Positions 857 to 55,615 are shown, counted from the stretch's first letter. The stretch: DNA of 64,000 bases from Octopus sinensis (GCF_006345805.1 NC_043010.1:64418001-64482000), one strand, 5' to 3'. Notes: a model not told the origin generated them from the sequence alone. Program-made: numbers and translations.

Positions 857-991
857 CATGTGCACCCGGGACTTATGGTTATGATTGTACAGGAGTTTGC
901 AACTGTCGTGATAATGCTACTTGTTACATAATGAATGGTAACTGTTCAAATGGATGCGAAATCACCTACACAGGAGCTGATTGTCAGACTC
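857..991 (+). CDS. Exon: EGF/laminin-EGF-like (MEGF10/SCARF-type) repeat of a receptor PTP-like gene
   Basis: tttcag acceptor, gtaag donor, phase 1-1; translates xCAPGTYGYDCTGVCNCRDNATCYIMNGNCSNGCEITYTGADCQT (8 Cys). Confidence 0.9.
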
Positions 992-1054
992 GTAAGTATT
1001 TTCTTATTAATGTAAGCATTATGATAGTGCTGATGATGGTGATGATATATCTAT

Positions 1055-1096
<42 letters not shown>

Positions 1097-1189
1097 TATT
1101 ATAAATCATATATACATACATAGATAGATACATACATACACATATATTATAAATCATTTTATCCTACACAGGTAGAAATATAGGAAAAA

Positions 1190-2330
1190 TAGAAGTTGAA
1201 AATGCACCAAGAATAGTTGAAATATTTTTTATTGATATATTTAAAGCTTTAACCGGTTTCACAGTTTACAATGATTTACAAAAAGCTCAAATAGAAAGAC
1301 GTGGCTTATGTCGCAGCTGTCTTGCTTCTGACTAGTGTTTGAAGCTTTCCTATTTTTATAGGGAGTTCATGGCTCAAACTAGTATACGTCTTGAACAGGA
1401 TTTGATAGGTACAGGATAGTCACATGACTTTGCTAGTATCAAGTGTCAATGTTTGGTGTCGTAAGTTAAGGCTGACACGTTTAACTGAATAAGTTCAAAC
1501 AATCAAAGCTCTGAATGTTTTTTGTCAAGTGTTTGTAGAGAATGAACACATGATTAAGTTTATAACCGTTTGTACGTCTCCTGCTATGTTCGTGCATTTG
1601 TTCTAAATAGATGGCTGACACGGTTGAGTGAACATGTTTAGTTATAATCAAGGCACTCCAAATTTACTCTGTCTGGCGGGAGAGTAGACAGGAGTCGTTT
1701 GTATGTAGTCCAGGGGCAACAATTTAGGTTGATAGCTGTGTAGCTTCATCATGATATGTGGCAGAATGAATTTTGTGTGTGAATAGTTATTTGTGTATGT
1801 ACTCTGTTAAACTTTGTTTAGTCTTGGTTTTTACTTTTGTATGAAAGTATTTTCTTTGTTTATCTGTGCTTCATCTGTAATATTCGCTGAACATAGGTAG
1901 AGTGAGAAGACCTGGAATTTCAGTGACTTACTTTTTGAACATTGGTCTATGTGACCACTCAGTGGAATCTGTCTACTACTAGGGTCTCGTAGCTGTTGTC
2001 AGTGAATGGTCAGTCTATTTTTAGAGTAAGTTTTGTTTGACCTATGAAATCTTCATTACATCCTCGACATTTGATAGTGTATATTAAATTGCCTGAAGAA
2101 CATGTAAAGTGATTTTTTTCGGTAAAAGTCTGTCCTGATTTGAATTTGTGTGTCGTGTCTTCAATAAATTTGATGAAGGTCCCGCAATTGGGGCGGCCGC
2201 ACTTTTTGATTGTTGGCGTAGGAATTGTGAAAGTTAATTTAACAATTGTTAGGAATTTTTTGAGGGACTTTGATTGGCTTTTACTTTTGATTATTTTCTG
2301 TATTTCAAATGAAGCAAGCATTCGAAATAC
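1190..2330 (-). mobile_element. Penelope-like element 3' fragment (GIY-YIG endonuclease plus 3' region)
   Basis: ORF 2010-2321: CGRPNC...FTCSSGNLIYTIKCRGCNEDFIGQT, the PLE Zn-finger/GIY-YIG signature; continues degenerate (IPLSGHIDQC...KENTFIQK). Confidence 0.8.
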
Positions 2331-2655
2331 ACAAAATAATCAAAAGTAAAAGACATACCACCTTAACATTGGCTACCCCTCAACACTGGCTTCTCCATAA
2401 CCAAGAACAGGGTTCCTAATCACCAATATCTATGCAGGCAGTAGACTGACATTCATCCCCTGCAACACTCTACATTCACCTCCATTCAGGTGGTGTAGGC
2501 ATGCAATCCCCATACACAAGTCTGTACACACATGCCTATCCACGCATACACAGATCTACGTGTACCTCTCTCCTTCCTCCCCAAGAGACACCATCAACCT
2601 CAGTCCAATGCCTGTTCCCTGCCCCCGTCAGCAATGCTCTTACAGCTATACTATC

Positions 2656-3529
2656 TGTTGTGGCGAGAGTCATTGACAACCCTGTGAGATTGGAAGAATG
2701 GACTAGCCGAACTCTTAGAAAAAAGAGCGTATTGGTTGAGACGACAGAGAAGTCGTAGGAGTTGTTGAGAGTTTGTGGAAGTTGTAGGAAAAATATTTTT
2801 GTTATTTTTTGTTTCAGTTTGCCTGATGACTTGTTTTTACTGGAAGAAAAAAACATTTATATTTTTACAGATAAGATTTATAGGGAGGTCCCATAAATGA
2901 AACAATTCCATCCAGTCAGTACCGAACAAGTTTGTTGCATTATTTAACAAAAAAACTTTCGCTTTGCTTTTCGTACTTAAAAGTATAAAAATGGAAGAGA
3001 AGGTTTGGTGGACGAAGTAGTAACAAAAGAAATAGACAAAATGATGTATATGAAAAGAGGCGAAAAATGGGAGCGCAAGACATTTAAACCAGCTAAAAAT
3101 AGATATACAGACAAAAGAAAAGAGATACCTATGGAAGTGCCAACGCCACAAGAAGTCGAACCGAGGCGTAACAGCACAAAAAAGAGGAAACAAACAGAAC
3201 GGTTGGAAATAGAGCCTAAACAGAAGAAATATTAAATTTCCCCAAGAAGAAAATCTCAAAAAGGGAGGTGTGGTGAAAGAAGAAGAAAAAAAATAACATT
3301 AACTTCCAACGGAAGTCAATCTCAAAAGGGGAGATGTTGTGGCGAGAGTCACTGACAGCCCTATGGGATTGGAAGAATGGATTAGTCGAACTCTTAGAAA
3401 AAGTAGCGTATTAGTCCAGACGACAGAGAAGTCGTAGGAGTCACTGAGAGTTCGTGGAAGTCATTGAGATTGACGAGAATTTGTATTTATTGGAGTAATT
3501 TGAAGTAAGTCGTGTGAGGACAGTTATGT
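2656..3529 (+). mobile_element. Internally deleted Gypsy-type LTR element
   Basis: About 128-bp direct repeats starting TGTTGTGGCG at 2656 and 3335; polypurine tract aaaaggggaga before the second; integrase C-terminal remnant (VTKEIDKMMY...RHLNQLKNRY...RRNSTKKRKQTERL); CTATC at 2651-2655 and 3530-3534. Confidence 0.7.
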
Positions 3530-3989
3530 CTATCCCCACTTCATGAAATATGTGCATCCAAGGAATAGAAGGATATAAAACTATCATACATTTGTCACAC
3601 TCACACACACACATACACATGCACATGCACACACAAGACAAAAACACACGCATGCATATGTATTTTCTTCCAGACAAGCATGCACGCATACATTTTCTTC
3701 CAGACAAGAATATACGCACACACTCAAATGACACAAATGTAAGAATGTACATACTTATACACACAAGCGCCCACACTTATATATATGTAAACACACACAC
3801 ATGCCCACACCAGACGAAACACTCGTACGCACATATGTTCATCCAGACAAACCTGCACGCACTCATACGTTTATACACAAATGCAAGAATGTATACACTT
3901 CCGCACACACGCTCATAAATGCACTGATCCCACCCTCAAACGAACTGAGAAACATCAGGTATGGGTTCAAAGTATATAATATTATATGG

Positions 3990-5690
3990 ACGATCTAAAG
4001 CTGTTTGCTAGAAATGACGAAGAGCTAGTAGGGCTGTTAACAACTGTTAAAGAGTTCAGAAATGACATTCAGATGGATTTTAGCCTTGATAAGCAACTTT
4101 TGTAAGAGGCAAGCTCAAACAAACAGCCTTCACTACATTAGATACCGATACTACCATCAAGGAGCTTTACCCTACAAGGAAGCTATAAATACCTGAGAAT
4201 AAACGAACGAGATGGTATAGAACATGCTATTATGAAGGAAAAAATAAGAAAGGAGTATTACAGGAGAGTAAGGCTCATACTAAAAACTGAACTCAACTCC
4301 AAACATCGCATCAAAGCCATTAACACCCTGGCACTTTCAGTAGTCCAATACAGCTTTAACATCATTAACTGGAAAGTTAGAGCTCCAACGCTTGAACAGG
4401 AAGTCAAGCAGACTACTAACATCTAAGAACATGCACTACCCAAAAGCAGACGTTGATCGTCTGAACCAACCTAGAAGTAATGGTGTAAGAGGAGTGATGC
4501 AGGTAGAACTACTATAAGACCTCCACAACAGCAATGAACAGGTATGTATCTAGTACACAGGACTGGATGCTGCAGCTTGTGTGCAAACACGAAAGCAGAA
4601 AAAAATCACATTCTATTGTCAAGGAAGCCTGCAAATTCGCAAGGGAACTCGGTATTAACCCTGGATTAGATGAAGAACCTGAAACCATTGTCACAAAACA
4701 AGTGAAACGGGTAAAAAAAGAACTGGCAGAAATTGAAGAGCGGTGGAGCCAGAATAATAATAATAATAATGGGCAGTATATACTTCGAAGTCGAAACATT
4801 ATTATTATCATCATTATTATTATTTACTTTTAATAATGTTGATGTAGATTAAGCAACGACCCATCAGTGGCTGAGAAGTGCAGGACTGAAACCAGAGACT
4901 GAAGGTTTCATATTAGCGGCACAAGACCAAAGCTTACTTACTAAAGACTACAAGCCTAATGTCCTTCAAAACGGTTCTGACCCTAAATGCAGATTCTGCG
5001 GTGCATTTGACGAAACTATTGACCATCTTGTTACGGGATGTTCTGTGCTGACAACAAACGAATACAAAAATTGCTACGATAGGATAGGGCAGTATTTATA
5101 TTGGAAAATATGTAAACACTACAAAATCAACACCCTTGCTTACTGTTATGAATATCATGCTGATCCAATTCTTGAAGGTAAAAATGTCACTATCCTCCGG
5201 GATTTTCCAGTCAACACTGACAGAACGATCAAGGCAAATCGACTTTGATAATTATTAAAGACAGGAAAGAAAATACTTGTAGACTTATAGGTGTCAGTGT
5301 TCCCACTGATAAAAATATATCTGTCAAGGAATTTCACAAACTAAGTAAATATAAGGACCTGGAAATTGAAATACAAAAGACGTGTTATTGTAGGTGCCCT
5401 AGCTATGATAAGAAAGGGATGTCAGAAACATCTAGATAATATCCCAGGAGAACCATGTCTCAGAGAAATCCAAAAGATTGTACTGACAAGTACTGCCCAC
5501 ATCCTTAGAAAAACATTATTAATTTAAATGTGTGTGCTGTATTACATGAATATATTTCGCTACTGCCCCTGCCACTTTCCCTCCCCAAGCTTTCAGTTAT
5601 ATTGTAACATCTATCCTTCACTCGCCCCTAGACGCTAGGTGTGTCTCGTCAAGTGATTGTAACAAACAAGTAGATTAAAAGTAAATAATA
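3990..5690 (+). mobile_element. R4/Dong-clade (RLE) non-LTR retrotransposon, 5'-truncated, degenerate
   Basis: MKEKIRKEYYRRVRLILKTELN, QWLRSAGLKPETEGF, CRFC zinc knuckle, DFPVNTDRTIKANR..KYKDLEIE; (AAT/GAT)n tail. Confidence 0.88.
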
Positions 5691-5922
5691 ATGATGATAA
5701 TAATAATGATGATGATGATGATGATGATACACATATAAATAATTATGATACACATATATATCTACACACATAAGAAAGCGACGAGCGATAAAGAGAATGA
5801 GATATGAATAGTTTAAAGTGAATGAGACAGTGAACGTAATATTCTGTTAACATTTTAATAATTCATCACTCTTTTTTCAATGAAAAGGCTCAGCTCAGTC
5901 AATGATTTTATACTTTTTACAG

Positions 5923-5998
5923 CAACGTATATATTCGAACTTATTGGAACCGGAATACTAGTGTGTCTAGTTTTAATAGCTGTGTGTGTCTACTGCTG
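5923..5998 (+). CDS. Exon: transmembrane helix
   Basis: tttttacag / gtaagt, phase 1-2; TYIFELIGTGILVCLVLIAVCVYC. Confidence 0.85.
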
Positions 5999-6311
5999 GT
6001 AAGTGGTCGATTTATTTTAAGTTTATGAATCTCTCATATAAATATCTTATATAAGCTGAATGAATCTTTCATATTAGCCGAATGAACTGCCCCTTGATAT
6101 TTTTGATGTGATAATCAAATATATCGAAGTGCAGTTCGATTTCGTGAAGTTAAGAATTTCCATTTGCAAACTTGTAGTTCTGGGTTCGACCTTAAGTTAT
6201 TTTGCTTGCGTTGTAGATTTTTACACACTCTGGTGTTCACTTATTCACATTTCTGCATGAACTTATATAAGCTTCCCGCTGCTGCTGATCAGCGACAAGC
6301 ATTGGCAATCT

Positions 6312-7295
6312 GCCTGACCGGTCTTGAAACATGGACCTAGGAGTCCCAGTCAACTGTGAGTCGTTGCAGCCTTTGACTTCGTGAACTCTGGCGGCACAGG
6401 GGAAGCTAGAATGCGATACGTAATCGTACTTGTGTTGCTCCTCCTGGGAACGGTGTGTTGCACAACGTTTCTAAGTATCGTTTCCTGGTCTAGTCCGCGA
6501 GTTCACGTCTACCCCCAAGGGCCGCACATTCCCGCTCTAACTCAAGTGTAGCAGGTTGCTGGGGAGCCGAAAGATAGCGATCCACGCTCGGTCAGGACGA
6601 AGCTAGAGGAAACTCTGGTGTAAGTTCGAAGTGCCTCTGACGTGCAAATCAATCGTTGTAATATGATGTAGGAATGAAAACATGAATCGAGCTGAAGTTT
6701 CCCTCAGCACAGCTGGCGAAATCACGAGAACGATTTGTAACTCTGTCCGGTAAAGCTGGCGGACCCAGTGATGTTGAGGGCCTCAATCCTCTCTCGAACG
6801 GACGAAAAGGTCCGCTTCTCTTGCGTGGAGGTGGCCGTAAATTATTGCAGCCATTGTAATGCGTCACGAACGCATGGTGGTAAGTGGGCTACTTTTAGTA
6901 AGCAGAACTGGTGATGTGGGATGAACCGAACGTCCGGCTAAGGTGTCTTACACCTCGCACTCTAGATCCCCGAAAGGATGTCGGTCGAGATAGACGGCAG
7001 GATGATGGCCATGGTTGTCAGAATCCGCTCAGGAGTGTGTAACAATTTCCTGCCGAATCGACTGGCTTCGAAAATATATGGCTCGAGCAAGCAACCGATA
7101 TCGGACCTGCTGGGCGACAGGTTGCGCGATCACCGGTGAGGCGACTTTCTGATGCTCGGTCTAGTAGGACGGTGCTATGAGCACGATCCTGGATGAAACC
7201 GATCGCAGGTGCAGATCTCGGTGGTAGTAGCAATTATTTGAACGAAACTTTCGAAGACCGAAGTAGAGAAGAGTTCCGTACCAACGGGTCGCATC
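6312..7295 (+). pseudogene. Degenerate 28S (LSU) rRNA fragment
   Basis: Mutated versions of conserved LSU motifs in order: gaccggtcttgaaacatggacc, gaggaaactctggtg, ctgacgtgcaaatc, gtaagcagaactgg..gatgaaccgaacg, aggagtgtgtaacaa, ggtgcagatctcggtggtagtagcaa; no 18S/5.8S or 3' LSU sequence nearby. Confidence 0.88.
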
Positions 7296-8439
7296 CGTGC
7301 GTATATTTTATATATACACATATCTTCTCATGCCCACCACCATCAATATGTATAATTTTGTTTGTTTTATTCTGTGTCAATACTTTTCGTACTTACTAAG
7401 TAAGATTGGTGTCCAAATATTTCCCCTGAATGCTGGATAGATTAAATTTCATAAATATTTTTCCCAATTACCCTAAGTCCAACAACAAGGAACTTGGAAT
7501 GCACGTGCACACACGCATGCATACACAGACGCACACACACACACACACACACAACACAACACATGCAAAAACATATCAGTGCATACACACATATGCACAC
7601 TCTCATAAACTAAGGATTCACGAACGCTTGTATTTATAAAGACAAAGTACAGAATATTTAAGGCTGCGTTTGCATAATCTATTAGAAGCTGAAACTTCTT
7701 CAATCGTTACAATGATTTTACAATTGCCAATTCTTTAAAGGAATGAAGAATAGACACTTTGTAACAATATATATTCGAAAATATTCGTGAAATCAAAATT
7801 GAATTGTCACTGAAAAAAGGTTAGAAAATGTGTCAGATATTCATTTATTCAATTATATGCAGAACATCATATATTCAAACGCAATATTTTCCTCAGGTAT
7901 TTAGTAATTCCTCTGTGAATATCAATAGAAAATTTTGCAAAAAGTCACCGATTTCAAATGACACCTATTAGAGCTATTATTGTACAGAATATGCCCATTG
8001 TCATGCATAGACGTATAACACCATGTTATAAACCAGTTGCAATTTTGAAAAATTGGAATTGTTGAATTTTGCAGACATATCTATCGATATTTATTGAAGA
8101 ATTTTCCAAATACCAACTGGGAAACATTACATTATTTCTTCCGTGATGGATTTCTCATAACCTGAAATGTGGCCATATATTGAAACACTAAAACTACTTT
8201 AACAATAGCTACAATGCTTGCTTCTGTGTGTTTTATACATATGATTCTCATGACATGAAAGTGTCATGTATTTGTATATGTCCACAGATGAATATCTAAT
8301 GCTTCGCGTATTTTAATCAAATAGATAAATGTGTGGCACATTTTCTTACCTTTTTAGTTACCTTCTCGATAACTAGACATATTTCGATATGAATATTTTG
8401 CTAATGCATTTTTGCATTATTTCTTGATAAATTTCAATA

Positions 8440-10023: not shown

Positions 10024-11534
10024 ATTCAGTAGTTTTATTTTTATAACGTGCTTTCACTTCACTTCCGAGCGCAGCTCTGTGTGCCTTGGGTATGTGCTGT
10101 GATTTGTTGTGATGCTCTAATGGTTACTGTATGGAAAGTGTTCTGTGTAGGATGTGTGCAGTGCCTAGTAGTGCAATTTTCTGTATGTTATATGTGTTTG
10201 TAAGTCTTGGTGTTTTTGTCATGTATTTGTCTGAATATTTTTTTATCATGCCCAATGCACCCACTATGATAGGAATTGCTTCTGTTTTTAGATTCCACAT
10301 TCTAGTCACCTCCATTTCCAGGTCTTTGTATTTTGAAAGTTTCTCTATTTCTTTTAGAGACACGTTGTCATCTGCTGGAATTGATACAACAATTAGAAAG
10401 CATTTTTTTTCTTCATGATCTCTGACAACTATATCTGGTCTGTTGGCTTTAATTTCTCTGTCTGTGTGTATTGGCATATCCCAGAGTATGGTTGCTTTCT
10501 CGTTTTCTGTGACCTTTTCTGGTGTGTGCCTATACCATCTTTTTTCTGTTATTCCATAATGTTGGTATAGCTTCCAGTGTTTGTAGGTCCCAACTCTGTC
10601 GTGTCTGTGAATATATCCCTTCTTAGCCAGGACTAGGCAGCCAGAGATAATATGATTTATTGTTTCTTGTCCATCTCCACATATTCTGCAGTTACTTGTT
10701 ATATTTCTTTTCATTACATGTTTTTGGTAATTTCTGGTGGGGAGGCTTTGGTCTTGTGCTGCAATTAAAAATCTCTCTGTCTCTGCTTTGAGTCCTGAGC
10801 TTCTCAACCACTGCTGGGATATTTCTTTGTCTATTTCTTTTGCATTTAGTTTAGTCCAGTACTTTCCATGAAGGGGCTTTTCTTGCCATCGTTTTATCTT
10901 GGTTCGTTGCTGTTCTAGTTTTAGTTTTGATTTCATTTGCTTTATAGCTTTTGTTGTGTTTTTCTTCTTCTTCTTCTTCTTATTTGTTAGGTGGTATGAT
11001 TTCTTGTTTGTATTTGTCAGCTTCCTTAAATACTGAGAACAATTTTTTGTTTTGCTCGTGTTTTGCCGCTATTTGTATCAGTTTTACTTGCTTCTGAAGT
11101 AGGTATTTTTGCCGTCAAATGGTGGTTATTTTATAGTAGTTTTCCAGCTTTATAAGGCCTCTAACACCTTCTATACGTTGTATATATAGCCTTTCTATGT
11201 CAGATTTTGGGTGATGCATCCTAGATCCTGTCATTATTTTTCTTGTTTTCCTATCTATTTTGGTTAGTTCATTTATCGTCCAGTAAAGGATATTGTAGCT
11301 ATAGCTTATAACTGGGACGGCTAAAGTGTTAATACCTATTATCTTGTTTTTAGCATTGAGCTCTGTTTTTAGTATTGATCTAACTCGTCTATAGTATTCT
11401 TTCTTTATTTTCTCTTTCATTTGTGTGTGTTGTGTCTTACCCAGTTCATGGATTCCTAAATATTTGTAAGTTTGGTTTTGGTCTAATTCTCTTATTTCAT
11501 TGACTTTATCTAGTGTTATGTTGCTACTCTTAAC

Positions 11535-11535
<1 letters not shown>
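10024..11535 (-). mobile_element. R4/Dong-clade retrotransposon, 5'-truncated, inserted in (TAA)n
   Basis: ORF 10124-10936 with CRIC..ETINHIISGC knuckle and RLE motif RPDIVV..KE.EKLSKYKDLE; TAA repeats at both ends. Confidence 0.93.
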
Positions 11536-11565
<30 letters not shown>

Positions 11566-11763
11566 GGATTAATTAGAATATAATGAGTGGTAAAGTAAAG
11601 AATAAGATGGAATACAAAAGAAAAAGTAAATAAAGTAAAAAATGGAAATATAATAAAATGAAGATAATTTAAAATAAATAAAATATGTGTAAAGTAAGTA
11701 AATAAAAGGAAGGACAAGAATATCCATTTATGAGATATATAAAAGAATATGTAAATACATATA

Positions 11764-12999
11764 CAGGGTGCATAAGATATTTGAGGACAGATTTATGTTT
11801 ATAAAAAAGCAGATATATAATAACGGATAATAACTTTATTTATCAAAAAATGCTTTGAGGATAAAAATAAACCTTCTTTTCTATAATGTTATTCAATAAA
11901 GCTACCTTCAGCTTCAACTACTGTTTCTATATGAGATCTAAATCATTTACATGCTCAAATCAAGTGGTCCTGGTTCATTTTGGACAATACTCTGACTATA
12001 GTAGCATTCAAAGAATCTTTGGTGTTGTGGGCGTGTTCATTGACTTCTGTCTCAACAAAGCTCCGCATGTAATAGTCCAATGGATTGAGATCTGGGGAAT
12101 TAGGAGGCCAAATGTTAGGCGTTATGTGATCATGAAAATTTTCAGCTATTCATTCCTGTGTTACTAGAGCCATGTGTGATAGTGCAGAGTCTTACTGAAA
12201 CACATATGACCTTTCATTGCATACACTGTCAATACAGGGCTTAACAATTATTTCCAGGACCTCAGTGTAAGCGGCAGAGTTAATTCTAAGGCCTTGTGGA
12301 AAGAAGTAATGAGGCATCAAATATCCTTCATTGCGGACAACCCCTAAACCCATGACAGTTGCAAGAAATTTTGTATGCATAGCACTTGGAACTTCAGAAG
12401 GGTCTGCACATAACCATCTGTCATTTCTTCTGTTAACGTTTTGATCTTGTTCAAAGTTTTTCTCGATTGAGAAAAACAAAATCAAATCTAGTTTAAGAGC
12501 CTTTTAGATCTGATATAGGTGATTTTCTTTTGCTTTTTCTGACAAATTGATGTTCTCTCATCATATTAAACTTATATCCGATGTTTCCGTGGACAACATT
12601 TCTGACTCTTCATTCTGACACATGGAGATCTTTTGCAATTGACCTCATGGACATTCTGGGACTGTAATCAATAGTGTGTTGAACTTGCTTTAGGATGCCT
12701 TTAGAATGCTTTTAGAGTGCCTTTCATGCTTTGACACTGGTGATACATTTCCATCTTCAGTCTCTAGCTTCTTACAAACTTTGTAGACGAAAGATCTGGC
12801 AACTTTTAAAAATCGAGATATTTCTAAATCGTAATGCCCAGCCTTTATAACCACAATAACAGCCTGCCTCTTCATTTGTTGAGTAATCTGAGGGTCTGCT
12901 ATTATTATTTTCTGAAACAAAGATTATACAGAGTTAGCAAAAAAAAAAATACAGCAATGACCCCAAAAAGGTATGACCTCAAATACCATATGCACCCTG
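11764..12999 (-). mobile_element. Tc1/mariner superfamily (maT-like) DNA transposon, degenerate
   Basis: TIRs cagggtgcataagatatttgagg / cctcaaataccatatgcaccctg with TA at both ends; transposase remnants DQNVNRRNDRW, FFPQGLRINSAAY, WPPNSPDLNPLDY. Confidence 0.9.
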
Positions 13000-13248: not shown

Positions 13249-13280
<32 letters not shown>

Positions 13281-17437: not shown

Positions 17438-17705
17438 CATACGTACATACACACACACACACACACACACATATATATGTAAGTTCAGCAAAATTTAGAT
17501 TCAAATGAATATGGTACTTAAGTCAGATGCACCGGAATTTTGTACGGTGTTATCCATATAAATCTATGGGGTGATTACCGAAGACATTCTTGTTGCTTAT
17601 TTTGAGTATATATATATATATCGTAGTCTGGTATTTGACTTGCCACAATACGTTCAGGTATGAAGTCTGTTTCTTATTTTACAACATATTTACATTTATG
17701 GATAT

Positions 17706-17758
<53 letters not shown>

Positions 17759-17855
17759 GCATATATATATATACATACACATACATATATATATGTATGT
17801 GTATGTATAAATGCATATGTGTGTATATATATATGTAAGTGTATGTATATATATA

Positions 17856-17915
<60 letters not shown>

Positions 17916-18034
17916 CTCCATAAATGTAAATATGTTGTAAAATAATGAACAGACTTGCAAGTTGTGTCCTTGTATAGTAGCAGACAATCGATATCTTACA
18001 CACATACACACATTCTGAACATGTATAGATTTAC

Positions 18035-18082
<48 letters not shown>

Positions 18083-18130
18083 AGGCACACACACACACAC
18101 ATATATATATACCTATATATATCATGCGTG
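17360..18130. repeat. (AT)n/(AC)n microsatellite block
   Basis: Directly visible. Confidence 0.9.
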
Positions 18131-18247
18131 TACATAATAATACATGTTGCATGCACTCTTACATGTACATGTACCCCACCACACACACATATCACTGAGA
18201 ACCTGAAAGCAACGTAATATCTCGAAAAAAACTTTTTTCTTTCGTAG

Positions 18248-21200
18248 TATATCAATGGTTTCCAAGAAACGAAAGGCTGAGAAAGAAAAGAACCCCCAAA
18301 AGTTTAAAGAGAAGCCTGAAAAAAAAACCAAAGCTGAGAAGAGTAAAGAAAAACGCGAAAAAAAACCGAAACCTGAGAAGACTAAAGAGAAGCCTGAAAA
18401 AAAAGAAAAAGCGAAAATTGATAAGGCTAAACAGAAACCTGAAAAAAGAGAAAAAGAGAAAACTGATAAGGCTAAACAGAAACCTGAAAAAAAAGAAAAA
18501 GAGAAATCTGATAAGGCTAAACAGAAACCCGAAAAAAAAGAAAAAGAGAAAACTGATAAGGCTAAACAGAAACCCGAAAAAAAAGAAAAAGAGAAAACTG
18601 ATAAAGCTAAACAGAAACCCGAAAAAAAAGAAAAAGAGAAAACTGATAAGGCTAAACAGAAACCCGAAAAAAAAGAAAAAGAGAAAACTGATAAGGCTAA
18701 ACAGAAACCTGAAAAGAAAGAAAAAGAGAAAACTGATAAGGCTAAACAGAAACCTGAAAAGAAAGAAAAAGAGAAATCTGATAAGGCTAAACAGAAACCT
18801 GAAAAAATAGAAAAAGAGAAAATTGATAAGGCTAAACAGAAACCTGAAAAGAAAGAAAAAGAGAAAACTGATAAGGCTAAACAGAAACCTGAAAAGAAAG
18901 AAAAAGAGAAAACTGATAAGGCTAAACAGAAACCTGAAAAAAAAGAAAAAGAGAAAACTGATAAGGCTAAACAGAAACCTGAAAAGAAAGAAAAAGAGAA
19001 ATCTGATAAGGCTAAACAGAAACCTGAAAAAATAGAAAAACAGAAAATTGATAAGGCTAAACAGAAACCTGAAAAAATAGAAAAAGAGAAAACTGATAGG
19101 GCTAAAGAAAAGCCAAGTAAAACTAAAAAAGATGATAAAACACAGAAAACCAAAAAAGCCCCAAAACCTGAGAGTAAAGAAAAGCCAAAGGAAACAAAGA
19201 AGCCTGAGAGCAAAGAGAAACCCCAAAAAAAGCCTAAAGTTGAGGATCAACAAAAACCTGATAAAGCACGGAAACCTGAGAGTAAAGAAAAAAATGAAAA
19301 AGAACGGAAACCTGAAAGCAAAGAGAGTACAGACAAAGCACGAAAACCTGAGAGTAAAAAGGATCATGAAAAAGTACGGAAACCTGAGAGTAAAAAGAGG
19401 CCTGAAACGGCGCGGAAACCTGAAAGTAAAGTGGAACGTGAAAAAGCACGGAAACCTGTGAGTAAAGAGAGGCCTGAAACGGCGCGGAAACCTGAAAGTA
19501 AAGTGGAACGTGAAAAAGCACGGAAACCTGTGAGTAAAGAGAGGCCTGAAACGGCGCGGAAACCTGAAAGTAAAGAGGAACGTGAAAAAGTACGGAAGCC
19601 TGAGAGTAGAGAGGAACGCGAGAAAGCAGGAAAACCTGAGAGTAAAGAGAGGCCTGAAACAGCACGGAAACCTGAAAGTAAAGAGGAACGTGAAAAAGTA
19701 CGGAAGCCTGAGAGTAGAGAGGAACGCGAGAAAGCAGGAAAACCTGAGAGTAAAGGGAGGCCTGAAACAACCCAGAAACCCGAGGGTAAAGAGAGACTCG
19801 AAATGGCACGGAAACCTGAGAGTAAAGAGGAACGTGAAAAAGCCCGAAAACCCGAGAGTAAAGAGAGGCCTGAAACAGCATGGAAACCTGAGAGTAAAGA
19901 GAGACCCGAAGCGATACGAAAACCCGAGAGCAAAGAGGAACGGGAAAAAGCCCGAAAACCTGAGAGTAAAGGGAGGCCTGAAATCGCACGGGGACCCGAG
20001 ATTAAAGAGGAACGGGAAAAAGCCCGAAAACCTGAGAGTAAAGAGAGACCTGAAACGGCACGGAGACCTGAAAGTAAGGAGAGACCCGAAACGGCACGGA
20101 GACCCGAGAGTAAAGAGAGACCTGAAACCGCTTGGAAGCCTGAAAGTAAGGAGAGACCCGAAACGGCACGGAGACCCGAGACTAAAGAAAGACCTGAAAC
20201 CGCACGGAAACCCGAGAGTAAAGAGAGACCTGAAACCACACGGAAGCCTGAAAGTAAGGAGAGACCCGAAACGGCACAGAGACCCGAGAGTAAAGAAGAA
20301 CGTGAAAAAGCATGGAAAGCTGAGAGTAAAGGGAGGCCTGAAACGGCACGGAGACCCGAGGGCAAAAAGGAATGGTTAAAAGCATGGAAAGCTGAGAGTA
20401 AAGGGAGGACTGAAACGGCACGGAGACCCGAGAGTAAAGAGGAATGGTTAAAAGCATGGAAAGCTGAGAGTAAAGGGAGGCCTGAAACGGCACGGAGACC
20501 CGAGGGCAAAGAGGAACGGGAAAAAGCATGGAAAGCTGAGAGTAAAGGGAGGCCTGAAATGGCACGGATACCCGAGAGTAAAGAGGAATGGTTAAAAGCA
20601 TGGAAAGCTGAGAGTAAAGGGAGGACTGAAACGGCACGGAGACCCGAGGGCAAAGAGGAACGGGAAAAAGCATGGAAAGCTGAGAGCAAAGGGAGGCCTG
20701 AAATGGCACGGATACCCGAGAGTAAAGAAGAACGGGAAAAAGCATGGAAAGCTGAGAGTAAAGAGAGGCCTGAAACGGCATGGAGACCCGAGGGTAAAGA
20801 GGAATGGTTAAAAGCATGGAAAGCTGAGAGTAAAGGGAGGACTGAAAAGGCACGGACACCCGAGAGTAAAGAGGAATGGTTAAAAGCATGGAAAGCTGAG
20901 AGTAAAGGGAGGACTGAAAAGGCACGGAGACCTGAGGGCAAAGAGGAACGGGAAAAAGCATGGAAAGCTGAGAGTAAAGGGAGGCCTGAAATGGCACGGA
21001 TACCCGAGAGTAAAGAGGAATGGTTAAAAGCATGGAAAGCTGAGAGTAAAGGGAGGACTGAAACGGCATGGAGACCCGAGGGTAAAGAAGAACGGGAAAA
21101 AGCATGGAAAGCTGAGAGTAAAGAGAGGCCTGAAACGGCATGGAGACCCGAGGGTAAGGAGGAATGGGGAAAACCCCAGAGAGCTGATATTAAAGACTGG

Positions 21201-21870
21201 CCTGAAAAAGAACGAATACCTGAAAGCAAAGCGAGACCTTTTAGTAAAGCGATACGCGACATAAAACAGAAATATGAGAGTAAAGAGATATACAGAAAGG
21301 AAAAGATTTCTGAGGAACCACAGATAGCTGATAAAAAAGAAAAAGCTGCGAAAATACATTTTCCTGAAAAAACACCAAAAATTAGTAGAATAGAGTCACT
21401 TGAAAGCAAAAAGATATCTGAGCATTTCCAGGTACCTGGGAAAACACAAAAGACTGAGAGAACGCCAATATCTGAAAGAATACAGATTTCTGAAGATAAA
21501 CAGGTATCCGATAAAACACAAATTCATGCAAAAACACCAAAAACTGGTAAAATACACACTGATTATTATCAAGTACCTGAGAGATCGCAGAAATCAATAA
21601 CAATCCAGATTCCGGAAGATAAACAGATATTTGAGAGAATACGAACTCCTGAAAAACAACCAAAAACTTGGAAAATAAAGCTACCTGGGTTTAATAGGAT
21701 ATCTAAGTTTTTCCAGAAACGTAGGGAGGTACAGATTCCTGAATGTAAAGAGATATCTGAAGAAATGTCCGAGGAGACACCGAAAGAGGAGGCCAAGCAG
21801 GCAACTGGGGAGTTATCTAAATATTTTCATATATCTGAGTATGGGCTGATACCTAGGACAAAAATAATTG
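18248..21870 (+). CDS. Giant exon: about 1207-codon K/E/P/R-rich tandem-repeat cytoplasmic region
   Basis: ttttttctttcgtag acceptor (phase 2, matches TM exon: VYC-C-ISMVSKKRK); attg/gtaag donor (phase 1); no stop in 3623 bp; 45-, 39- and 78-bp repeat units. Confidence 0.85.
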
Positions 21871-21928
21871 GTAAGATTATCTATCTATCTATCTATCTAA
21901 CAATGTCCATCATTCTTGTCTCTCTTTC

Positions 21929-21979
<51 letters not shown>

Positions 21980-22178
21980 CCGAGTGAGAGAGAGAGAGAG
22001 AGAGGGGGGGAATAAAGAAGGGAGAGACAAGAATGAGAAAAGAAATTTAGCGAGGTGTAAAATTCACGCAAGGGATATTAAATATCCAAAAACTTTACTG
22101 GTTTATATTATCTATATCAATAACAATGTTATTCCAATAGGTAAATAAAAAATAAACATAAGTTTATTAATATATAAA

Positions 22179-24303: not shown

Positions 24304-24434
24304 GATTACCTAAGGACCATGTGAGGTTTGAAGACGAAATTACTTCTAGTTATCGGCCATTAAGTGATCCACCAATTATGAAATACATAAAACAACAATT
24401 GCAACTGTCTGAACCGTTTTTAGATGACTTTTTG
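24304..24434 (+). CDS. Exon: juxtamembrane segment preceding the PTP domain
   Basis: Phase 1-0, gtaagt donor; GLPKDHVRF...MKYIKQQLQLSEPFLDDFL joins TLPKG; acceptor is an uncommon GAG after a pyrimidine tract. Confidence 0.7.
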
Positions 24435-25482: not shown

Positions 25483-25570
25483 ACGTTACCAAAAGGCCTA
25501 ATCCACCCTACTAAAGCGGCTAGTAAGACAGTGAACACAGGAAAAAACCGCGACAAATCTATACTTCCAT
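25483..25570 (+). CDS. Exon: PTP motif 1 region
   Basis: 88 bp, phase 0-1; TLPKGLIHPTKAASKTVNTGKNRDKSILP. Confidence 0.88.
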
Positions 25571-42001: not shown

Positions 42002-42075
42002 ATGATCATTCTCGCATAATTCTGCATCCAGATGAGATATCATATTCAGATTACATTAATGCATCCTATTTAAAC
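42002..42075 (+). CDS. Exon: PTP motifs 2-3
   Basis: tttcag / gtaagt, phase 1-0; YDHSRIILHPDEISYSDYINASYLN. Confidence 0.95.
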
Positions 42076-44242: not shown

Positions 44243-44267
44243 AATCGGAAGTACATAATAACTCAAG
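44243..44267 (+). CDS. Microexon: PTP motif 4
   Basis: ctctgttacag / gtaagt, 25 bp, phase 0-1; NRKYIITQ(G). Confidence 0.88.
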
Positions 44268-46598: not shown

Positions 46599-46695
46599 GG
46601 CCTCTAAAAGAAACCATTGTAGATTTTTGGAGAATGATATGGCAACAAGAATGTACAACGATTATCATGTTTCAGAATATGAAGAAAAAGGAAAG
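46599..46695 (+). CDS. Exon: PTP motifs 5-6, carries an apparent 1-nt deletion
   Basis: GPLKETIVDFWRMIWQQECTTIIMF then frame shifts to EYEEKGK; 97 bp where 98 is needed for the phase 0 junction. Confidence 0.9.
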
Positions 46696-49714: not shown

Positions 49715-49837
49715 ATAAAAAATATTCAGTACTGGCCAAATGTCACAGAAACAGTGGAGTATGGTTTAATGAAAATTAAAACCATTAGTATAGCTACAAA
49801 CGCAGTCTACGAAAAGAGGAAATTCCACATCTTCAAG
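49715..49837 (+). CDS. Exon: PTP motif 7
   Basis: ttgtag / gtaatg, phase 0-0; IKNIQYWPNVTETVEYGLMKIKTISIATNAVYEKRKFHIFK. Confidence 0.9.
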
Positions 49838-50519: not shown

Positions 50520-50580
<61 letters not shown>

Positions 50581-51506: not shown

Positions 51507-51552
<46 letters not shown>

Positions 51553-51609
51553 GTATAGGTATGTATATATATGTGTATGTATGTTATATATATATAAGAT
51601 GTACCCAGT

Positions 51610-52280: not shown

Positions 52281-52282
52281 TG

Positions 52283-52328
<46 letters not shown>

Positions 52329-52480
52329 ATTTGAATGTCTTTGTGAAAATTACTTTTAAAAAAAATTATAAAATCTTTTATCTGGATGTTACCTTTTTGA
52401 AACAAGCTTTATTCCTAGTGCGTGTGCACACTTTCGATTAATCTTCTCAAAAATGTGTATATTTATATGTATGTATGTAT

Positions 52481-53724: not shown

Positions 53725-53761
<37 letters not shown>

Positions 53762-53767
53762 TTCTAT

Positions 53768-53812
<45 letters not shown>

Positions 53813-54404
53813 GGATTTAATAAAAACAACAAACGGAAAATTTGAAAAAGCCACAGCACACGGAAAATTCGTAGCTAATTTCTTACCAGTCAACGTTCAA
53901 GAGATCATAATAGTTTGGTGCCGTTATCTTCTTGGAAGCATCAGTTGCCAAAAGCCACTGAGAATAGCTAATTGACGTATAGGACAATGACAAAAACAAA
54001 CAAAGCTGTGCGGGTACCAGACAGATGAATATAGGTAACGCAAAGGAAAACGAAAATGTCCTGAAGGACTGGAACACGAGAAGGGCAGTACGAACGATGA
54101 AATAATCAAACCTTATAGGAAAAAGATGAAGAAACATGAAGAAGCATGATCGACCTGGTCGCCAGCAAAGCAAAACAAAATGACGCAGGCTTAGATGGTC
54201 ACGTGGTAGTGGGAGGAGAAAGAAAAAGAGTCGTGGAGAGCAAAGGAACAGAAGAAACAGAGGAGAATAATAGAGAGGGAAAGAGAGAAAGATCGAGAGA
54301 GGAATATAAGAGAGAGAAAGAGAAAAGGAGTGATTTGGACATTGCAGAAAATATATTCCAAGGTTATTTTTACAAATGTGTAAAACTGCATGCACACACA
54401 CACA

Positions 54405-54458
<54 letters not shown>

Positions 54459-54466
54459 ACACACAC

Positions 54467-54513
<47 letters not shown>

Positions 54514-55264
54514 CGGGGTGAAAGGATGATTTCTAACTCAAATTCCAAGCATGATTTCGCATATATTATACTCTTGACATAGAACGTATAAGCAAAGCAA
54601 ACGACAGTAGCTGGATTTGAACATCTACTGTAGCCAAACATTCTTTGAAAAGACACATATTTTTCTATTCATACGAGTTGGTGCAGGATTTGTAAGATGT
54701 ATTTTCTTTAGATTATAACTCGTAAGAGTTGATTGACTAGTTCGTGTAGAATTATTTAGGTCCGATAATGCATAATTTTCCTATATTGTGTAACATGCAA
54801 ACTTTTATTGCTCATAAAGTTGAAGTTAATAATATAGTGTTTCTGTATTGTGTAAAATGTAGCATTTTATATTTTTACAGCAACATGCAGTGCTTTCTAC
54901 ATCTTTATGGCTCTTGTATCATTACTTAGGTTCTGGAATGTATGTTTTCTATCTTCTAACATGCTGCATGTTATAGATCATATAGCATGCATTATTTAGA
55001 AAAAAGACCCTGACGAAATCTTAGTGCCAAAATGCATAAGGGAAAATAAAAAGAAGGGGAAGGATGGAAGAAGCAGAGCAAAAGAATTAAATAAGAGGTA
55101 AAAAGAATGAGCGAAAAAGAATGAATAAGGGAGAGAGAGACTGAGAAAGAGAGAAACAAGGATAGAGAGAGTAATAAAGAGGAAGAGAGAGTGAAAGAAA
55201 ACTAGGTATAGAAAAAGGTTAAAGAGTGAATGAAGTCAATTGAAAGAGTTTGAGAGAATGAAGT

Positions 55265-55301
<37 letters not shown>

Positions 55302-55457
55302 GTGTGTGTGTGAACGTGTTTGAGCGTGTGTGCATGTGTGTATGTGAGCGCGCGCGTGTGTGAGAGAGAGTGAGTGAGTGAGGACGTTTGAGTAATATGT
55401 AAGTAAACTATATTTATCAAAATTACTGAAATTTGGAAAGTTACATTTACATTGCAG

Positions 55458-55615
55458 AAAGAACTGGTGAAAACTGAAGGTTGGGAAATTAATCATTTCA
55501 CTTTCTTGAAATGGCCAGAACGAGGTGTACCTATTGATCCAGAACACATTCTAGATTTTCGAAATGCTGTTACAAACATTTTCAATAAGAAACTACCAAT
55601 TGTTGTGCAAAGCAG
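55458..55615 (+). CDS. Exon: PTP WPD loop and start of P-loop, catalytic residues substituted
   Basis: ttgcag / gtcag, phase 0-2; ...HFTFLKWPERGVPIDPEHILDFRNAV...LPIVVQS(S/R). Confidence 0.93.

What the first reader, a model, noticed from the sequence alone, without database searches (positions are those of the whole stretch)
857..55615. Receptor with EGF ectodomain, 1200-aa repeat stalk inside the cell, and a dead membrane-proximal phosphatase
Seen: ten exons with GT-AG ends (one GAG acceptor) and matching phases (one needing a 1-nt correction) give EGF-like repeat, TM helix, CC plus KKRK, giant charged repeat region, PTP fold. Established: in receptor PTPs D1 lies close to the membrane and is usually the active domain; molluscs have expanded EGF-repeat receptor PTP families. 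Inference: a scaffold or decoy receptor whose pseudophosphatase is held far from the membrane by a long disordered tether; I do not recognise this architecture.
Basis: partly seen in the sequence, partly recalled or inferred. Interest (0 to 1): 0.8.

Follow-up and report, generated by a model that had tools for sequence, protein, structure and literature searches.

The report
Octopus dead receptor phosphatase, giant repeat exon

Summary
All ten exons lie on the + strand with AG/GT borders, and every junction is in phase except 46695->49715. The window is Octopus sinensis chromosome C14.

The rest of D1 and a second phosphatase domain, D2, lie 1.5-24 kb past the window end. Many more EGF exons lie upstream.

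D1 reads KNRD, WPE and VVQSSNGVGRSG (catalytic Cys->Ser). D2 reads VHGSDGMKNSG. Both states are shared with the O. bimaculoides orthologue (P0047).

The giant exon (18248-21870, 1207 codons) sits where active paralogues have a ~95-nt basic exon with the same phases. It has 0 stops in frame, against 18 and 224 in the other frames. Its repeat units are 45 and 72 nt. Its last 235 residues have no relative outside P0047. P0047 keeps the frame through two in-frame indels.

Between the two species, 17.5 frameshifting indels are expected in the coding sequence and one is seen. dN/dS is 0.55-0.73, so constraint is weak.

That single lesion is a 1-nt deletion in O. sinensis (TTTCAG against TTTCCAG). 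It is either an assembly error or a recent null allele. I found no transcript evidence and no O. sinensis or O. vulgaris protein model.

Verdict: a new variant of known kinds (mollusc EGF/discoidin receptor phosphatases; PTPRU-like receptor pseudophosphatases). Interest is moderate.

The parts
857..991 (+). Last EGF-like (8-Cys, MEGF/laminin-type) ectodomain exon. It enters and leaves in phase 1.
   Evidence: It is 33-42% identical to EGF modules of paralogues. It is conserved in O. bimaculoides at L019 3191-3325.
5923..5998 (+). Transmembrane-helix exon (TYIFELIGTGILVCLVLIAVCVYC). It ends in phase 2.
   Evidence: The O. bimaculoides counterpart is 79 nt, an in-frame 3-nt difference.
6280..7365 (+). 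Degenerate 28S-rRNA-like fragment inside the intron. It is not part of the coding model.
   Evidence: Rfam RF02543, 285 bits. It is conserved in O. bimaculoides.
18248..21870 (+). Giant juxtamembrane exon of 3623 nt (1207 whole codons), entering in phase 2 and leaving in phase 1. It starts C-ISMVSKKRKAEKEK. Composition: K 25%, E 20.5%, P 9%, R 9%.
   Evidence: It sits at the position of a ~95-nt exon with the same phases in paralogue par1. It is unique in the genome. It is also present in O. bimaculoides.
18361..19106 (+). Tandem array 1: 45-nt unit x 16.6 copies (KEKTDKAKQKPEKKE), 94% matches, 0% indels.
   Evidence: AlphaFold2 predicts one helix of about 236 residues at pLDDT 70-82.
19266..21173 (+). 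Tandem array 2: 72-nt unit (36-nt sub-period) x 26.5 copies (ARKPESKEEREKAWKPESKERPET), 84% matches, 0% indels.
   Evidence: There are 29 synonymous distinct variants against 20.2 expected at random. It holds 27 of the exon's 30 in-phase AGA|GTAAAG donor-like sites.
21174..21870 (+). Non-repetitive 3' part of the giant exon (232 codons).
   Evidence: P(open) is about 2e-8. Against O. bimaculoides: dN/dS 0.73, with two indels of 63 and 72 nt, both in frame. The only hit among 1.84 billion representative proteins is P0047. AlphaFold2 pLDDT is 35-48.
24304..24434 (+). Juxtamembrane/pre-D1 exon (G-LPKDHVRFEDE...PFLDDFL) with a 'gag' acceptor. It enters in phase 1 and leaves in phase 0.
   Evidence: The acceptor and sequence are conserved in O. 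bimaculoides. It is homologous to the paralogue JM exon.
25483..25570 (+). D1 exon carrying KNRD in place of KNRY.
42002..42075 (+). D1 exon (YDHSRIIL...DYINASYLN).
44243..44267 (+). 25-nt D1 microexon (NRKYIITQ-G).
   Evidence: The paralogues have the same microexon (NQRYIACQ). It is conserved in O. bimaculoides.
46599..46695 (+). D1 exon (GPLKETIVDFWRMIWQQ...) carrying the 1-nt deletion, TTTCAG at about 46665-46670. It is 97 nt, against 98 nt in O. bimaculoides. As assembled, the next exon then reads AGA TAA.
   Evidence: The assembly holds no second copy of this stretch.
49715..49837 (+). D1 exon (IKNIQYWPN...), with KN in place of KC.
55458..55615 (+). D1 exon with WPERGVP (WPD->WPE), ending ...PIVVQS-S (HC->QS). 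This is the last exon inside the window.
   Evidence: The paralogue exon ends ...VVHC at the same splice position.

Best explanation
The locus is the middle of one large Octopus sinensis gene. The part I reconstructed spans at least 87 kb. If a discoidin-like exon 202 kb upstream belongs to it, the gene spans about 290 kb.

The gene belongs to the mollusc family of receptor tyrosine phosphatases with a discoidin/MEGF-type EGF ectodomain, one TM helix and tandem D1-D2 PTP domains. Two things set it apart from its active neighbours on the same chromosome.

(1) Both PTP domains are catalytically dead by sequence.
- D1 has Cys->Ser in the signature motif (VVQSSNGVGRSG), WPD->WPE and KNRY->KNRD.
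- D2 has lost both the Cys and the Arg (VHGSDGMKNSG).

(2) The short basic exon that follows the TM exon in paralogues has grown from about 95 nt (31 residues) to 3623 nt. The growth came from in-frame tandem duplication of 45-nt and 72-nt units. It places about 1200 K/E/P/R-rich, non-globular residues between the membrane and D1.

Shown here:
- exon structure and phases
- the dead motifs and their conservation in O. bimaculoides
- positional homology of the giant exon with the small paralogue exon
- long-term maintenance of the reading frame

Inferred:
- The protein acts without catalysis, as a ligand-binding receptor whose pseudophosphatase domains bind partners.
- In that role it would compete with, or scaffold for, the active paralogues, as PTPRU does for PTPRK.
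- The charged repeat would act as a long spacer that sets how far from the membrane the PTP domains sit.

In the assembled O. sinensis sequence a single-base deletion in a D1 exon breaks the frame. I cannot tell whether this is an assembly error or a recent null allele.
For: Exons and phases:
-. With one N placed at the deletion, the model reads through 1851 codons to a stop at window coordinate 88079.

Identity and family:
- paralogue P0003 lies on the same 68.4-Mb contig.
- a cluster of PTP exons on C14 between 64.4 and 65.3 Mb.
- the octopus clade has 100/99 support.

Dead motifs:
- alignment to PTPRS D1.
- the paralogues have VVHCSAGVGRTG, WPD and KNRY at the same exon positions.

Orthologue:
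- P0047 is 83% identical over 96% of the query, including the last 200 residues of the giant exon.
- All 18 mappable splice sites are conserved.
- The repeat also lies at the orthologous site in O. bimaculoides, mostly hidden in a ~2.4-kb run of N.

Frame maintenance:
- Introns differ by 7.8% and carry 8.8 indels per kb, 77% of them not multiples of 3.
- That predicts 17.5 frameshifting indels in 2575 aligned coding nt. One is seen.
- No stop codons occur in any exon.

Giant exon specifically:
- Stops per frame are 0/18/224.
- P(open) is about 2e-8 for the unique part.
- Repeat periods are 45 and 72 nt with 0% indels.
- There is an excess of synonymous variants among copies.
- Its two indels against O. 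bimaculoides are both in frame.
- Skipping it gives TGG ATT ACC TAA.
- The paralogue exon has the same phases, 2 in and 1 out.

No globular fold:
- pTM is 0.20 in both AlphaFold2 jobs.

Precedent for a scaffold role of a receptor with two dead PTP domains:
- PMC7320164.
Against: - I have no transcript evidence of any kind.
- No O. sinensis or O. vulgaris protein model for this locus exists in the 5.8-billion-protein collection between 265 and 4557 aa. This would fit a locus annotated as a pseudogene.
- The assembled sequence has a frameshift in D1.
- dN/dS is 0.55-0.73, and the confidence intervals include 1. Amino-acid constraint is weak.
- The O. bimaculoides model may owe its first exon to ab initio ORF extension rather than to RNA evidence.
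- Loss of the KNRY Tyr argues against strong phosphotyrosine binding by D1. A substrate-trapping type of decoy is therefore not obvious.
Confidence: 0.6

Rival explanations
1. The gene has recently become a pseudogene in the O. sinensis (perhaps O. sinensis/O. vulgaris) lineage. On this reading the 1-nt deletion in exon 46599-46695 is real, the mRNA carries a premature stop in D1, and what we see is a freshly dead copy of a formerly functional pseudophosphatase receptor.
For: - The exon is 97 nt here and 98 nt in O. bimaculoides, and the next exon then reads AGA TAA.
- No protein model from O. sinensis or O. vulgaris was found in any length class searched.
- dN/dS is high.
- The assembly holds no alternative copy that could contradict the base call.
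Against: - This is the only lesion in 1851 codons.
- At the intron indel rate, many more lesions would be expected if decay had lasted more than a small fraction of the time since the split from O. bimaculoides.
- Single-base indels are a common error of long-read assemblies (general knowledge).
- All splice sites are intact.
Confidence: 0.25
2. The giant open frame is not translated in full. Either a shorter in-frame isoform is made from one of the 30 donor-like AGA|GTAAAG sites inside the repeats, or the exon is skipped. Skipping gives a stop after three codons and hence a membrane-anchored ectodomain with no PTP domains.
For: - Thirty AGAGTAAAG sites lie in the exon, against 0.73 expected in the window, and all are in phase 1 like the true donor.
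- Skipping yields TGG ATT ACC TAA.
- No transcript data exist to exclude either outcome.
Against: - The internal sites have A at -1 and A at +5, so they are weaker than the real donor TTG|GTAAGA. That donor is conserved in O. bimaculoides.
- The non-repetitive 3' 232 codons lie downstream of 29 of the 30 sites, yet they are kept open and free of frameshifts across species. This argues that they are translated.
Confidence: 0.1
3. The locus is a long-dead duplicate, and the 'giant exon' is merely a purine-rich minisatellite that happens to be open. T-poor DNA has few stop codons.
For: - The exon is 47% A, 27% G and 11% T, and long frames are open on both strands.
- Catalytic residues are lost in both PTP domains.
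- dN/dS is near 0.7.
Against: - Only one of the three + frames is fully open, with stops of 0/18/224.
- The unique 3' part has 20% T and still has no stop (P about 2e-8).
- Seventeen frameshifts are expected and one is seen.
- The dead motifs are identical in two species, and a VVQS/WPE D1 is also found in paralogue P0007 on another chromosome. The dead state is therefore old and has been maintained.
- The repeat is not a dispersed satellite.
Confidence: 0.05

Closest known systems
Mollusc MEGF/galactose-binding-domain receptor PTPs (for example the SudRes1 RPTP paralogue cluster of Biomphalaria sudanica, PMC12297450) and the octopus paralogues P0002, P0003 and P0006
   Same: - MEGF-type EGF repeats are encoded one per exon.
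- A discoidin/GBD domain is present in relatives and in the upstream O. bimaculoides model.
- There is a single TM helix and tandem PTP domains, with D2 already degenerate.
- The genes lie in tandem clusters of fast-evolving paralogues.
- Exon boundaries and phases in the JM and D1 region are identical, including the 25-nt microexon.
   Different: - The paralogues keep KNRY, WPD and VVHCSAGVGRTG in D1.
- They have about 105 residues between the TM helix and KNRY.
- This gene has a dead D1 and about 1280 residues there.
PTPRU, the human receptor pseudophosphatase (PMC7320164)
   Same: It is a receptor with two non-catalytic PTP domains and WPE in D1. [quoted passage not shown]
   Different: - PTPRU keeps the catalytic Cys, which is occluded, and belongs to the R2B MAM-Ig-FN3 class.
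- It has no giant juxtamembrane repeat.
- It is not an orthologue: D1 of this gene sits inside an octopus-specific clade.
Octopus sinensis paralogue P0007 ('RPTP alpha-like isoform X2', chromosome C10)
   Same: - D1 has VVQS (HC->QS) and WPE.
- It groups with this gene at 89/84 support.
- The ectodomain type is the same.
   Different: - P0007 has also lost the P-loop Arg (VVQSKTGAGSTG).
- It has a normal short juxtamembrane region.
- The grouping joins long branches and may be an artefact.
PTPRN/IA-2 and PTPRN2/phogrin (from my own knowledge, not tested here)
   Same: They are receptor-type PTP family members regarded as catalytically inactive or nearly so on phosphotyrosine.
   Different: They have a single PTP domain that keeps the Cys, a different ectodomain and no repeat spacer.
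Charged repeat spacers such as ER/K single alpha-helices and the titin PEVK segment (from my own knowledge; a functional analogy only)
   Same: They are K/E(/P)-rich tandem repeats with a high fraction of charged residues and no globular fold. Here the charged fraction is 0.57, and AlphaFold2 predicts a long helix for array 1.
   Different: - There is no sequence homology.
- A proline every 12-15 residues is atypical for ER/K helices.
- The mechanical or spacer role is not tested.

Membership tests
Classical receptor-type protein tyrosine phosphatase (tandem PF00102 domains) | PTP-fold domain matching the whole Y_phosphatase profile, present twice (D1, D2) | tested here: met
   PF00102 at E=2.9e-90, 302 bits, two stretches. 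D1 covers profile positions 1-234 of 234. D2 exons lie at window coordinates 82227-88079.
Classical receptor-type protein tyrosine phosphatase (tandem PF00102 domains) | Signature motif (I/V)HCxAGxGR(S/T)G with the nucleophilic Cys in D1 | tested here: not met
   pivvQSsNgvgrsg aligned to pivvHCsAgvgrtg of PTPRS. The same holds in O. bimaculoides. The Arg is kept.
Classical receptor-type protein tyrosine phosphatase (tandem PF00102 domains) | WPD loop with the general-acid Asp, and the KNRY phosphotyrosine-recognition Tyr | tested here: not met
   WPERGVP and KNRD. The active paralogues have WPDHGIP and KNRY.
Classical receptor-type protein tyrosine phosphatase (tandem PF00102 domains) | Type I topology: ectodomain, one TM helix, cytoplasmic PTP domains | tested here: met
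   By reading the sequence only, with no TM predictor run. A 23-residue hydrophobic stretch is followed by CC and KKRK, with EGF exons 5' and PTP exons 3'. The signal peptide was not found, because the 5' end of the gene lies outside what I reconstructed.
Receptor pseudophosphatase (PTPRU-like in function) | Both PTP domains lack residues required for catalysis | tested here: met
   D1 has Cys->Ser and Asp->Glu. D2 reads VHGSDGMKNSG, with no Cys and no Arg.
Receptor pseudophosphatase (PTPRU-like in function) | No phosphatase activity in vitro, while partners of active paralogues are still bound | not testable with these tools
   This needs recombinant protein, pNPP or phosphopeptide assays, and pull-downs.
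Receptor pseudophosphatase (PTPRU-like in function) | Orthology to vertebrate PTPRU (R2B class) | tested here: not met
   D1 falls in an octopus-only clade (100/99). The ectodomain is EGF-type, not MAM-Ig-FN3.
Mollusc MEGF/GBD receptor PTP family | Extracellular MEGF-type (8-Cys) EGF repeats | tested here: met
   The exon at 857-991, plus at least 17 further modules upstream on the same strand. Pfam gave no EGF hit for the single module at E<0.01.
Mollusc MEGF/GBD receptor PTP family | Extracellular discoidin / galactose-binding-like (F5/8 type C) domain | tested here: inconclusive
   The O. bimaculoides model that contains the orthologous EGF and TM exons carries PF00754 and PF22633. In O. 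sinensis the nearest + strand discoidin-like exon is 202 kb upstream. Linkage to this gene is not shown.
Mollusc MEGF/GBD receptor PTP family | D1 groups with family members and the exon structure is shared | tested here: met
   (tree). Searches show the same exon borders and phases as par1 and par2.
Unprocessed pseudogene | Several disabling lesions (stops, frameshifts, lost splice sites) | tested here: not met
   There is one 1-nt deletion, no stops, and all splice sites are intact. 17.5 frameshifting indels are expected and 1 is seen.
Unprocessed pseudogene | Neutral evolution (dN/dS about 1) | tested here: inconclusive
   0.55 (0.31-1.20) for JM+D1, 0.72 (0.37-1.9) for linker+D2, and 0.73 (0.38-1.85) for the giant-exon 3' part.
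ER/K single alpha-helix or PEVK-like spacer | Extended, non-globular charged repeat that acts as a rod or entropic spring | tested here: inconclusive
   Charged fraction 0.57, net charge +0.11 per residue, 9% Pro. AlphaFold2 without an alignment gives array 1 as one helix (pLDDT 70-82), array 2 as short helices (50-69) and the tail as disordered (35-48), with pTM 0.20. Single-sequence models of low-complexity sequence are weak evidence.

The most novel reading that the evidence does not exclude
The receptor has a cytoplasmic 'ruler'. A fast-evolving, repeat-built charged spacer sets how far a catalytically dead PTP tandem sits from the membrane, at tens of nanometres. The spacer length could be tuned in evolution by gain and loss of repeats. 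It could perhaps also be tuned within an animal, by use of any of 30 in-phase donor-like sites. The protein would then sequester or scaffold partners of the active paralogues away from the membrane.
Probability: 0.1. Interest if true: 0.7.

Novelty: new variant of a known kind. Interest (0 to 1): 0.42.

Why it matters
Receptors whose D1 and D2 are both dead are rare. PTPRU is described as the only one among human RPTPs (PMC7320164). This gene would be an independent invertebrate case, with a clear Cys->Ser change kept in two octopus species.

The 38-fold in-frame growth of a juxtamembrane exon, from about 95 nt to 3623 nt, is not a feature I know from any RPTP. It gives a natural test of whether the distance from the membrane matters for a non-catalytic PTP scaffold.

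There is also a practical lesson. The repeat sits in an assembly gap in O. bimaculoides, and that gap split the gene into two annotated models. A one-base indel may have removed the gene from the O. sinensis annotation.

The value is limited by three things: there are no expression data, amino-acid constraint is weak, and the O. sinensis copy may be a null allele.

Tried and rejected
(1) I looked for an annotated protein from this locus with three word-index searches covering lengths 265-4557 aa. Only the partial O. bimaculoides model P0047 came up, with nothing from O. sinensis or O. vulgaris.

(2) I looked for a second copy or haplotig of the frameshifted exon in the assembly. Only the window itself matched, so the base call cannot be cross-checked.

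(3) I looked for relatives of the giant exon.
- Own genome: only weak low-complexity matches.
- 1.84 billion representative proteins: only P0047.
- Pfam: nothing.
I therefore rejected a transposon, a dispersed satellite and an exon captured from another gene as its origin.

I rejected this. The next exon exists 9.9 kb downstream, outside the window, and continues ...VVQS|SNGVGRSG. The Cys codon lies in the exon inside the window and reads AGC.

(5) I considered alternative donors or acceptors that could absorb the 1-nt shortfall at 46695/49715. None exists.

(6) I considered whether the frame is open merely because the DNA is T-poor. I rejected this for the frame as a whole and for the unique 3' part. 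It does explain the many long open frames on the other strand.

(7) dN/dS did not separate 'weakly constrained gene' from 'neutral'. The indel test did.

(8) I did not reach the 5' end of the gene. EGF exons continue to at least -146 kb.

Full report
**Where the window lies.** The window is G000:C14:64418001-64482000 of a 2.72-Gb genome in 13,516 contigs. A paralogous protein named 'LOC115219456 [Octopus sinensis]' lies on a contig of exactly the C14 length, 68,403,164 bases. The organism is therefore Octopus sinensis. The window is AT-rich and full of microsatellites and retrotransposon remnants.

**Check of the observation.**
- 857-991: one 8-Cys EGF-like module
- 5923-5998: TM helix, TYIFELIGTGILVCLVLIAVCVYC
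- 18248-21870: giant exon, starting C-ISMVSKKRKAEKEK
- 24304-24434: acceptor preceded by G ('gag')
- 25483-25570
- 42002-42075
- 44243-44267: a 25-nt microexon
- 46599-46695
- 49715-49837
- 55458-55615

Phases chain through all junctions except 46695->49715, which is one base short. Pfam finds Y_phosphatase at E=2.9e-90 on the spliced product.

The model ends at a donor site in the middle of D1.
- The next exon lies at window coordinate 65501-65636, 1.5 kb past the window end. It continues the P-loop.
- Eight more exons finish D1, a linker and a second PTP domain. They end at a TGA at coordinate 88079.
- With one N placed at the frameshift, the 19 exons read as 1851 codons without a stop.
- Upstream, EGF-module exons of three recurring types continue on the same strand to at least -146 kb.
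- A discoidin-like exon lies 202 kb upstream.

**The family.**
- The genome holds at least 107 exon-level PTP matches, with a dense cluster on C14 between 64.4 and 65.3 Mb.
- Two neighbouring copies, which I call par1 and par2, have the same exon borders and phases, including the microexon. They are compact, at about 20 kb.
- Annotated octopus paralogues (P0002, P0003, P0006) share one plan: discoidin domain, many EGF repeats, TM helix, about 105 juxtamembrane residues, an active D1 (KNRY, WPD, VVHCSAGVGRTG) and a degenerate D2.
- The same architecture (MEGF, galactose-binding domain, tandem PTP) in clusters of variable paralogues is described for the snail Biomphalaria (PMC12297450).

**The dead phosphatase.** Aligned to PTPRS D1, the window's D1 shows these changes:

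| Canonical motif | This gene |
|---|---|
| KNRY | KNRD |
| IKC.QYWP | IKNIQYWP |
| WPDHGVP | WPERGVP |
| pivvHCsAgvgrtg | pivvQSsNgvgrsg |

- The nucleophilic Cys is Ser, the general-acid Asp is Glu and the phosphotyrosine-stacking Tyr is Asp.
- The Cys codon lies in the exon that ends at 55615. The paralogue splits the motif at the same position (VVHC|SAGVGRTG). 'Dead' is therefore not an artefact of the truncated model.
- D2 reads VHGSDGMKNSG, with no Cys and no Arg.
- A further O. sinensis paralogue on chromosome C10 (P0007) also has VVQS and WPE. It groups with this gene at 89/84 support, but both sit on long branches.

**The orthologue.**
- P0047, 'RPTP T [Octopus bimaculoides]', is 821 aa. 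It is 83% identical over 96% of a query made of the last 200 residues of the giant exon plus the JM region and D1.
- Its locus (L019) is collinear with the window.
- All 18 splice sites that can be mapped are conserved, the 'gag' acceptor included.
- The dead motifs of D1 and D2 are identical.
- In O. bimaculoides the repeat lies at the same place, but about 2.4 kb of it is a run of N. The same WK.ESKGRPETARRPESKEEREKA units emerge from the gap, in frame.
- P0047 starts at the first Met after the gap.
- The orthologous EGF and TM exons fall into a separate upstream model of 691 aa that carries discoidin domains. The gap therefore split one gene into two annotated models.

**Is the giant exon coding?**

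(a) Position.
- In par1 a single exon lies between the TM and JM exons. It encodes KFRGKRPIAKRDQKIRKIPENKYAGAIPEDT and enters in phase 2 and leaves in phase 1, like the giant exon.
- The giant exon is thus the counterpart of a ~95-nt exon. Both lengths are 2 mod 3.
- Skipping it gives TGG ATT ACC TAA.

(b) Frame.
- Stops in the three + frames are 0, 18 and 224 in 1207 codons.
- The purine-rich repeats would be open by chance in two frames. The non-repetitive last 232 codons have 20% T and P(open) of about 2e-8, with 0 of 20000 shuffles open.

(c) Repeats.
- Units are 45 nt x 16.6 copies (94% matches) and 72 nt x 26.5 copies (84% matches), both with 0% indels.
- Among distinct variants in array 2, 29 are synonymous against 20.2 expected at random.

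(d) Cross-species comparison.
- In the 214 alignable codons of the 3' part, the only indels are 63 and 72 nt, both in frame. dN/dS is 0.73.

(e) Origin.
- The peptide has no counterpart elsewhere in the genome.
- It matches no Pfam family.
- Among 1.84 billion representative proteins it hits only P0047.
- It is therefore a local expansion, not a dispersed satellite or a transposon.

**Gene or pseudogene?**
- Introns differ by 7.8% between the two species and carry 8.8 indels per kb, 77% of them not multiples of three.
- At that rate, 2575 aligned coding bases should hold about 22.7 indels, 17.5 of them frameshifting. I see four, of which one is frameshifting.
- There is no stop codon in any exon.
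- dS (0.063-0.081) equals the intron divergence, and dN is lower.
- dN/dS is 0.55 (0.31-1.20) for JM+D1, 0.72 for linker+D2 and 0.73 for the giant-exon tail. It is 2.2 for the 70 codons of EGF+TM, too few to interpret.
- The reading frame has therefore been maintained over the time since the two species split, while the amino-acid sequence is only weakly constrained. That pattern fits a fast-evolving, lineage-specific receptor better than a long-dead copy.

**The frameshift.**
- Exon 46599-46695 is 97 nt here and 98 nt in O. bimaculoides.
- O. bimaculoides reads ...IIMFPEYEEKGK|IKNIQYWP. The window reads ...IIMF then QNMKKKE+AG, and the PEYEEKGK peptide reappears in the +1 frame.
- One C of TTTCCAG is missing. 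As assembled, the next exon reads AGA TAA.
- No alternative splice site repairs this, and no second copy exists in the assembly.
- It is the only lesion. It is therefore either an assembly error or a very recent, possibly polymorphic, null allele.
- The absence of any O. sinensis or O. vulgaris protein model for this locus is compatible with either reading.

**Nature of the spacer.**
- The 1208 residues are K 25%, E 20.5%, P 9%, R 9% and A 7%.
- The charged fraction is 0.57, the net charge is +0.11 per residue and 9.5% of residues are hydrophobic.
- AlphaFold2 without an alignment gives pTM 0.20 for both halves.
- Array 1 is modelled as one helix of about 236 residues (pLDDT 70-82). Array 2 is modelled as 10-15-residue helices between prolines (pLDDT 50-69). 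The unique tail is modelled as disordered (pLDDT 35-48).
- 'Non-globular spacer' is supported. 'Disordered' is only partly supported.

**How it most likely works (inference).**
- The ectodomain binds a ligand as in the paralogues.
- The cytoplasmic part cannot dephosphorylate. D1-D2 would act as a binding module.
- The nearest documented precedent is PTPRU, a receptor with two dead domains and WPE in D1. It binds substrates of the active PTPRK and is proposed to compete as a scaffold (PMC7320164).
- The spacer would place this module tens of nanometres from the membrane. That is far from where the active paralogues' D1 sits, about 105 residues from the bilayer.
- Loss of the KNRY Tyr makes classical substrate trapping doubtful.

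**Novelty.**
- Known kinds: the mollusc MEGF/discoidin RPTP family and receptor pseudophosphatases.
- New: a Cys->Ser D1 together with a Cys-less D2, kept in two species, and the 38-fold in-frame expansion of a juxtamembrane exon.
- Without expression data, and with a possible null allele in this genome, I rate interest as moderate.

Noticed in passing
window 6280-7365 (+), in the intron after the TM exon: A degenerate fragment of 28S rRNA (Rfam LSU_rRNA_eukarya, 285 bits) sits in the intron. The 5' part of the reported match (5630-6280) is AT-rich noise that overlaps the TM exon. The fragment is conserved in O. bimaculoides. There it is overlapped by the odd terminal ORF (L019 4851-5165) of the upstream gene model, which may be why that model ends there.
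   Followed up: partly
window 18340-21285 (+), inside the giant exon: There are 30 copies of AGA|GTAAAG, against 0.73 expected in the window. All are in phase 1 like the true donor at 21870, so any of them would splice in frame to 24304. They are weaker than the real donor.
   Followed up: partly
C14 upstream of the window, window coordinates -9380 to -146204 (L006-L010, L021-L030): At least 17 further EGF-module exons lie on the + strand in recurring triplets of three sequence types, spaced 1-25 kb apart, with no PTP exon between them. This is either one very long ectodomain or segmental duplicates of ectodomain exons. A discoidin-like exon lies at C14:64216306-64216560.
   Followed up: partly
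L019 7403-9824 (O. bimaculoides CM046614.1): A ~2.4-kb run of N covers most of the orthologous repeat. The gene is annotated there as two separate models: a 691-aa discoidin/EGF/TM part and the 821-aa P0047, which starts at the first Met after the gap.
   Followed up: yes
P0007 (Octopus sinensis, chromosome C10): A second paralogue has a dead D1 (VVQSKTGAGSTG, WPEGMIP, KNRF) and a normal short juxtamembrane region. It groups with this gene at 89/84, but the join is between long branches.
   Followed up: partly
window 857-991 and 5923-5998 against L019: The EGF and TM exons show 21 non-synonymous and 3 synonymous differences between the two octopus species (dN/dS 2.2 over 70 codons). That is too few sites to call positive selection.
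   Followed up: no
window 38273-38809 (-), 10124-11792 (-), 4853-5248 (+), 33242-33945, 56815-57135, 60668-63676 (+): Remnants of non-LTR retrotransposons lie in the introns and downstream. There is an RVT_1 match at 38273-38809 and zf-RVT matches at 10124-11068 and 4853-5248. The remaining open frames resemble these.
   Followed up: partly
window 59618-60215: A tandem repeat of roughly 90-nt units is open on both strands (CHRHRCQTRLADGHARMVF... on the + strand). Its nature was not examined.
   Followed up: no
G000:C27:7686416-7687275 (+): This is the only other place in the genome with weak similarity (31-34% identity, E=1e-5) to the non-repetitive tail of the giant exon. It is probably a compositional match.
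   Followed up: no
window 17679-18158 and 21890-22000: (TA)n/(CA)n and (CT)n microsatellites directly flank the giant exon on both sides.
   Followed up: no
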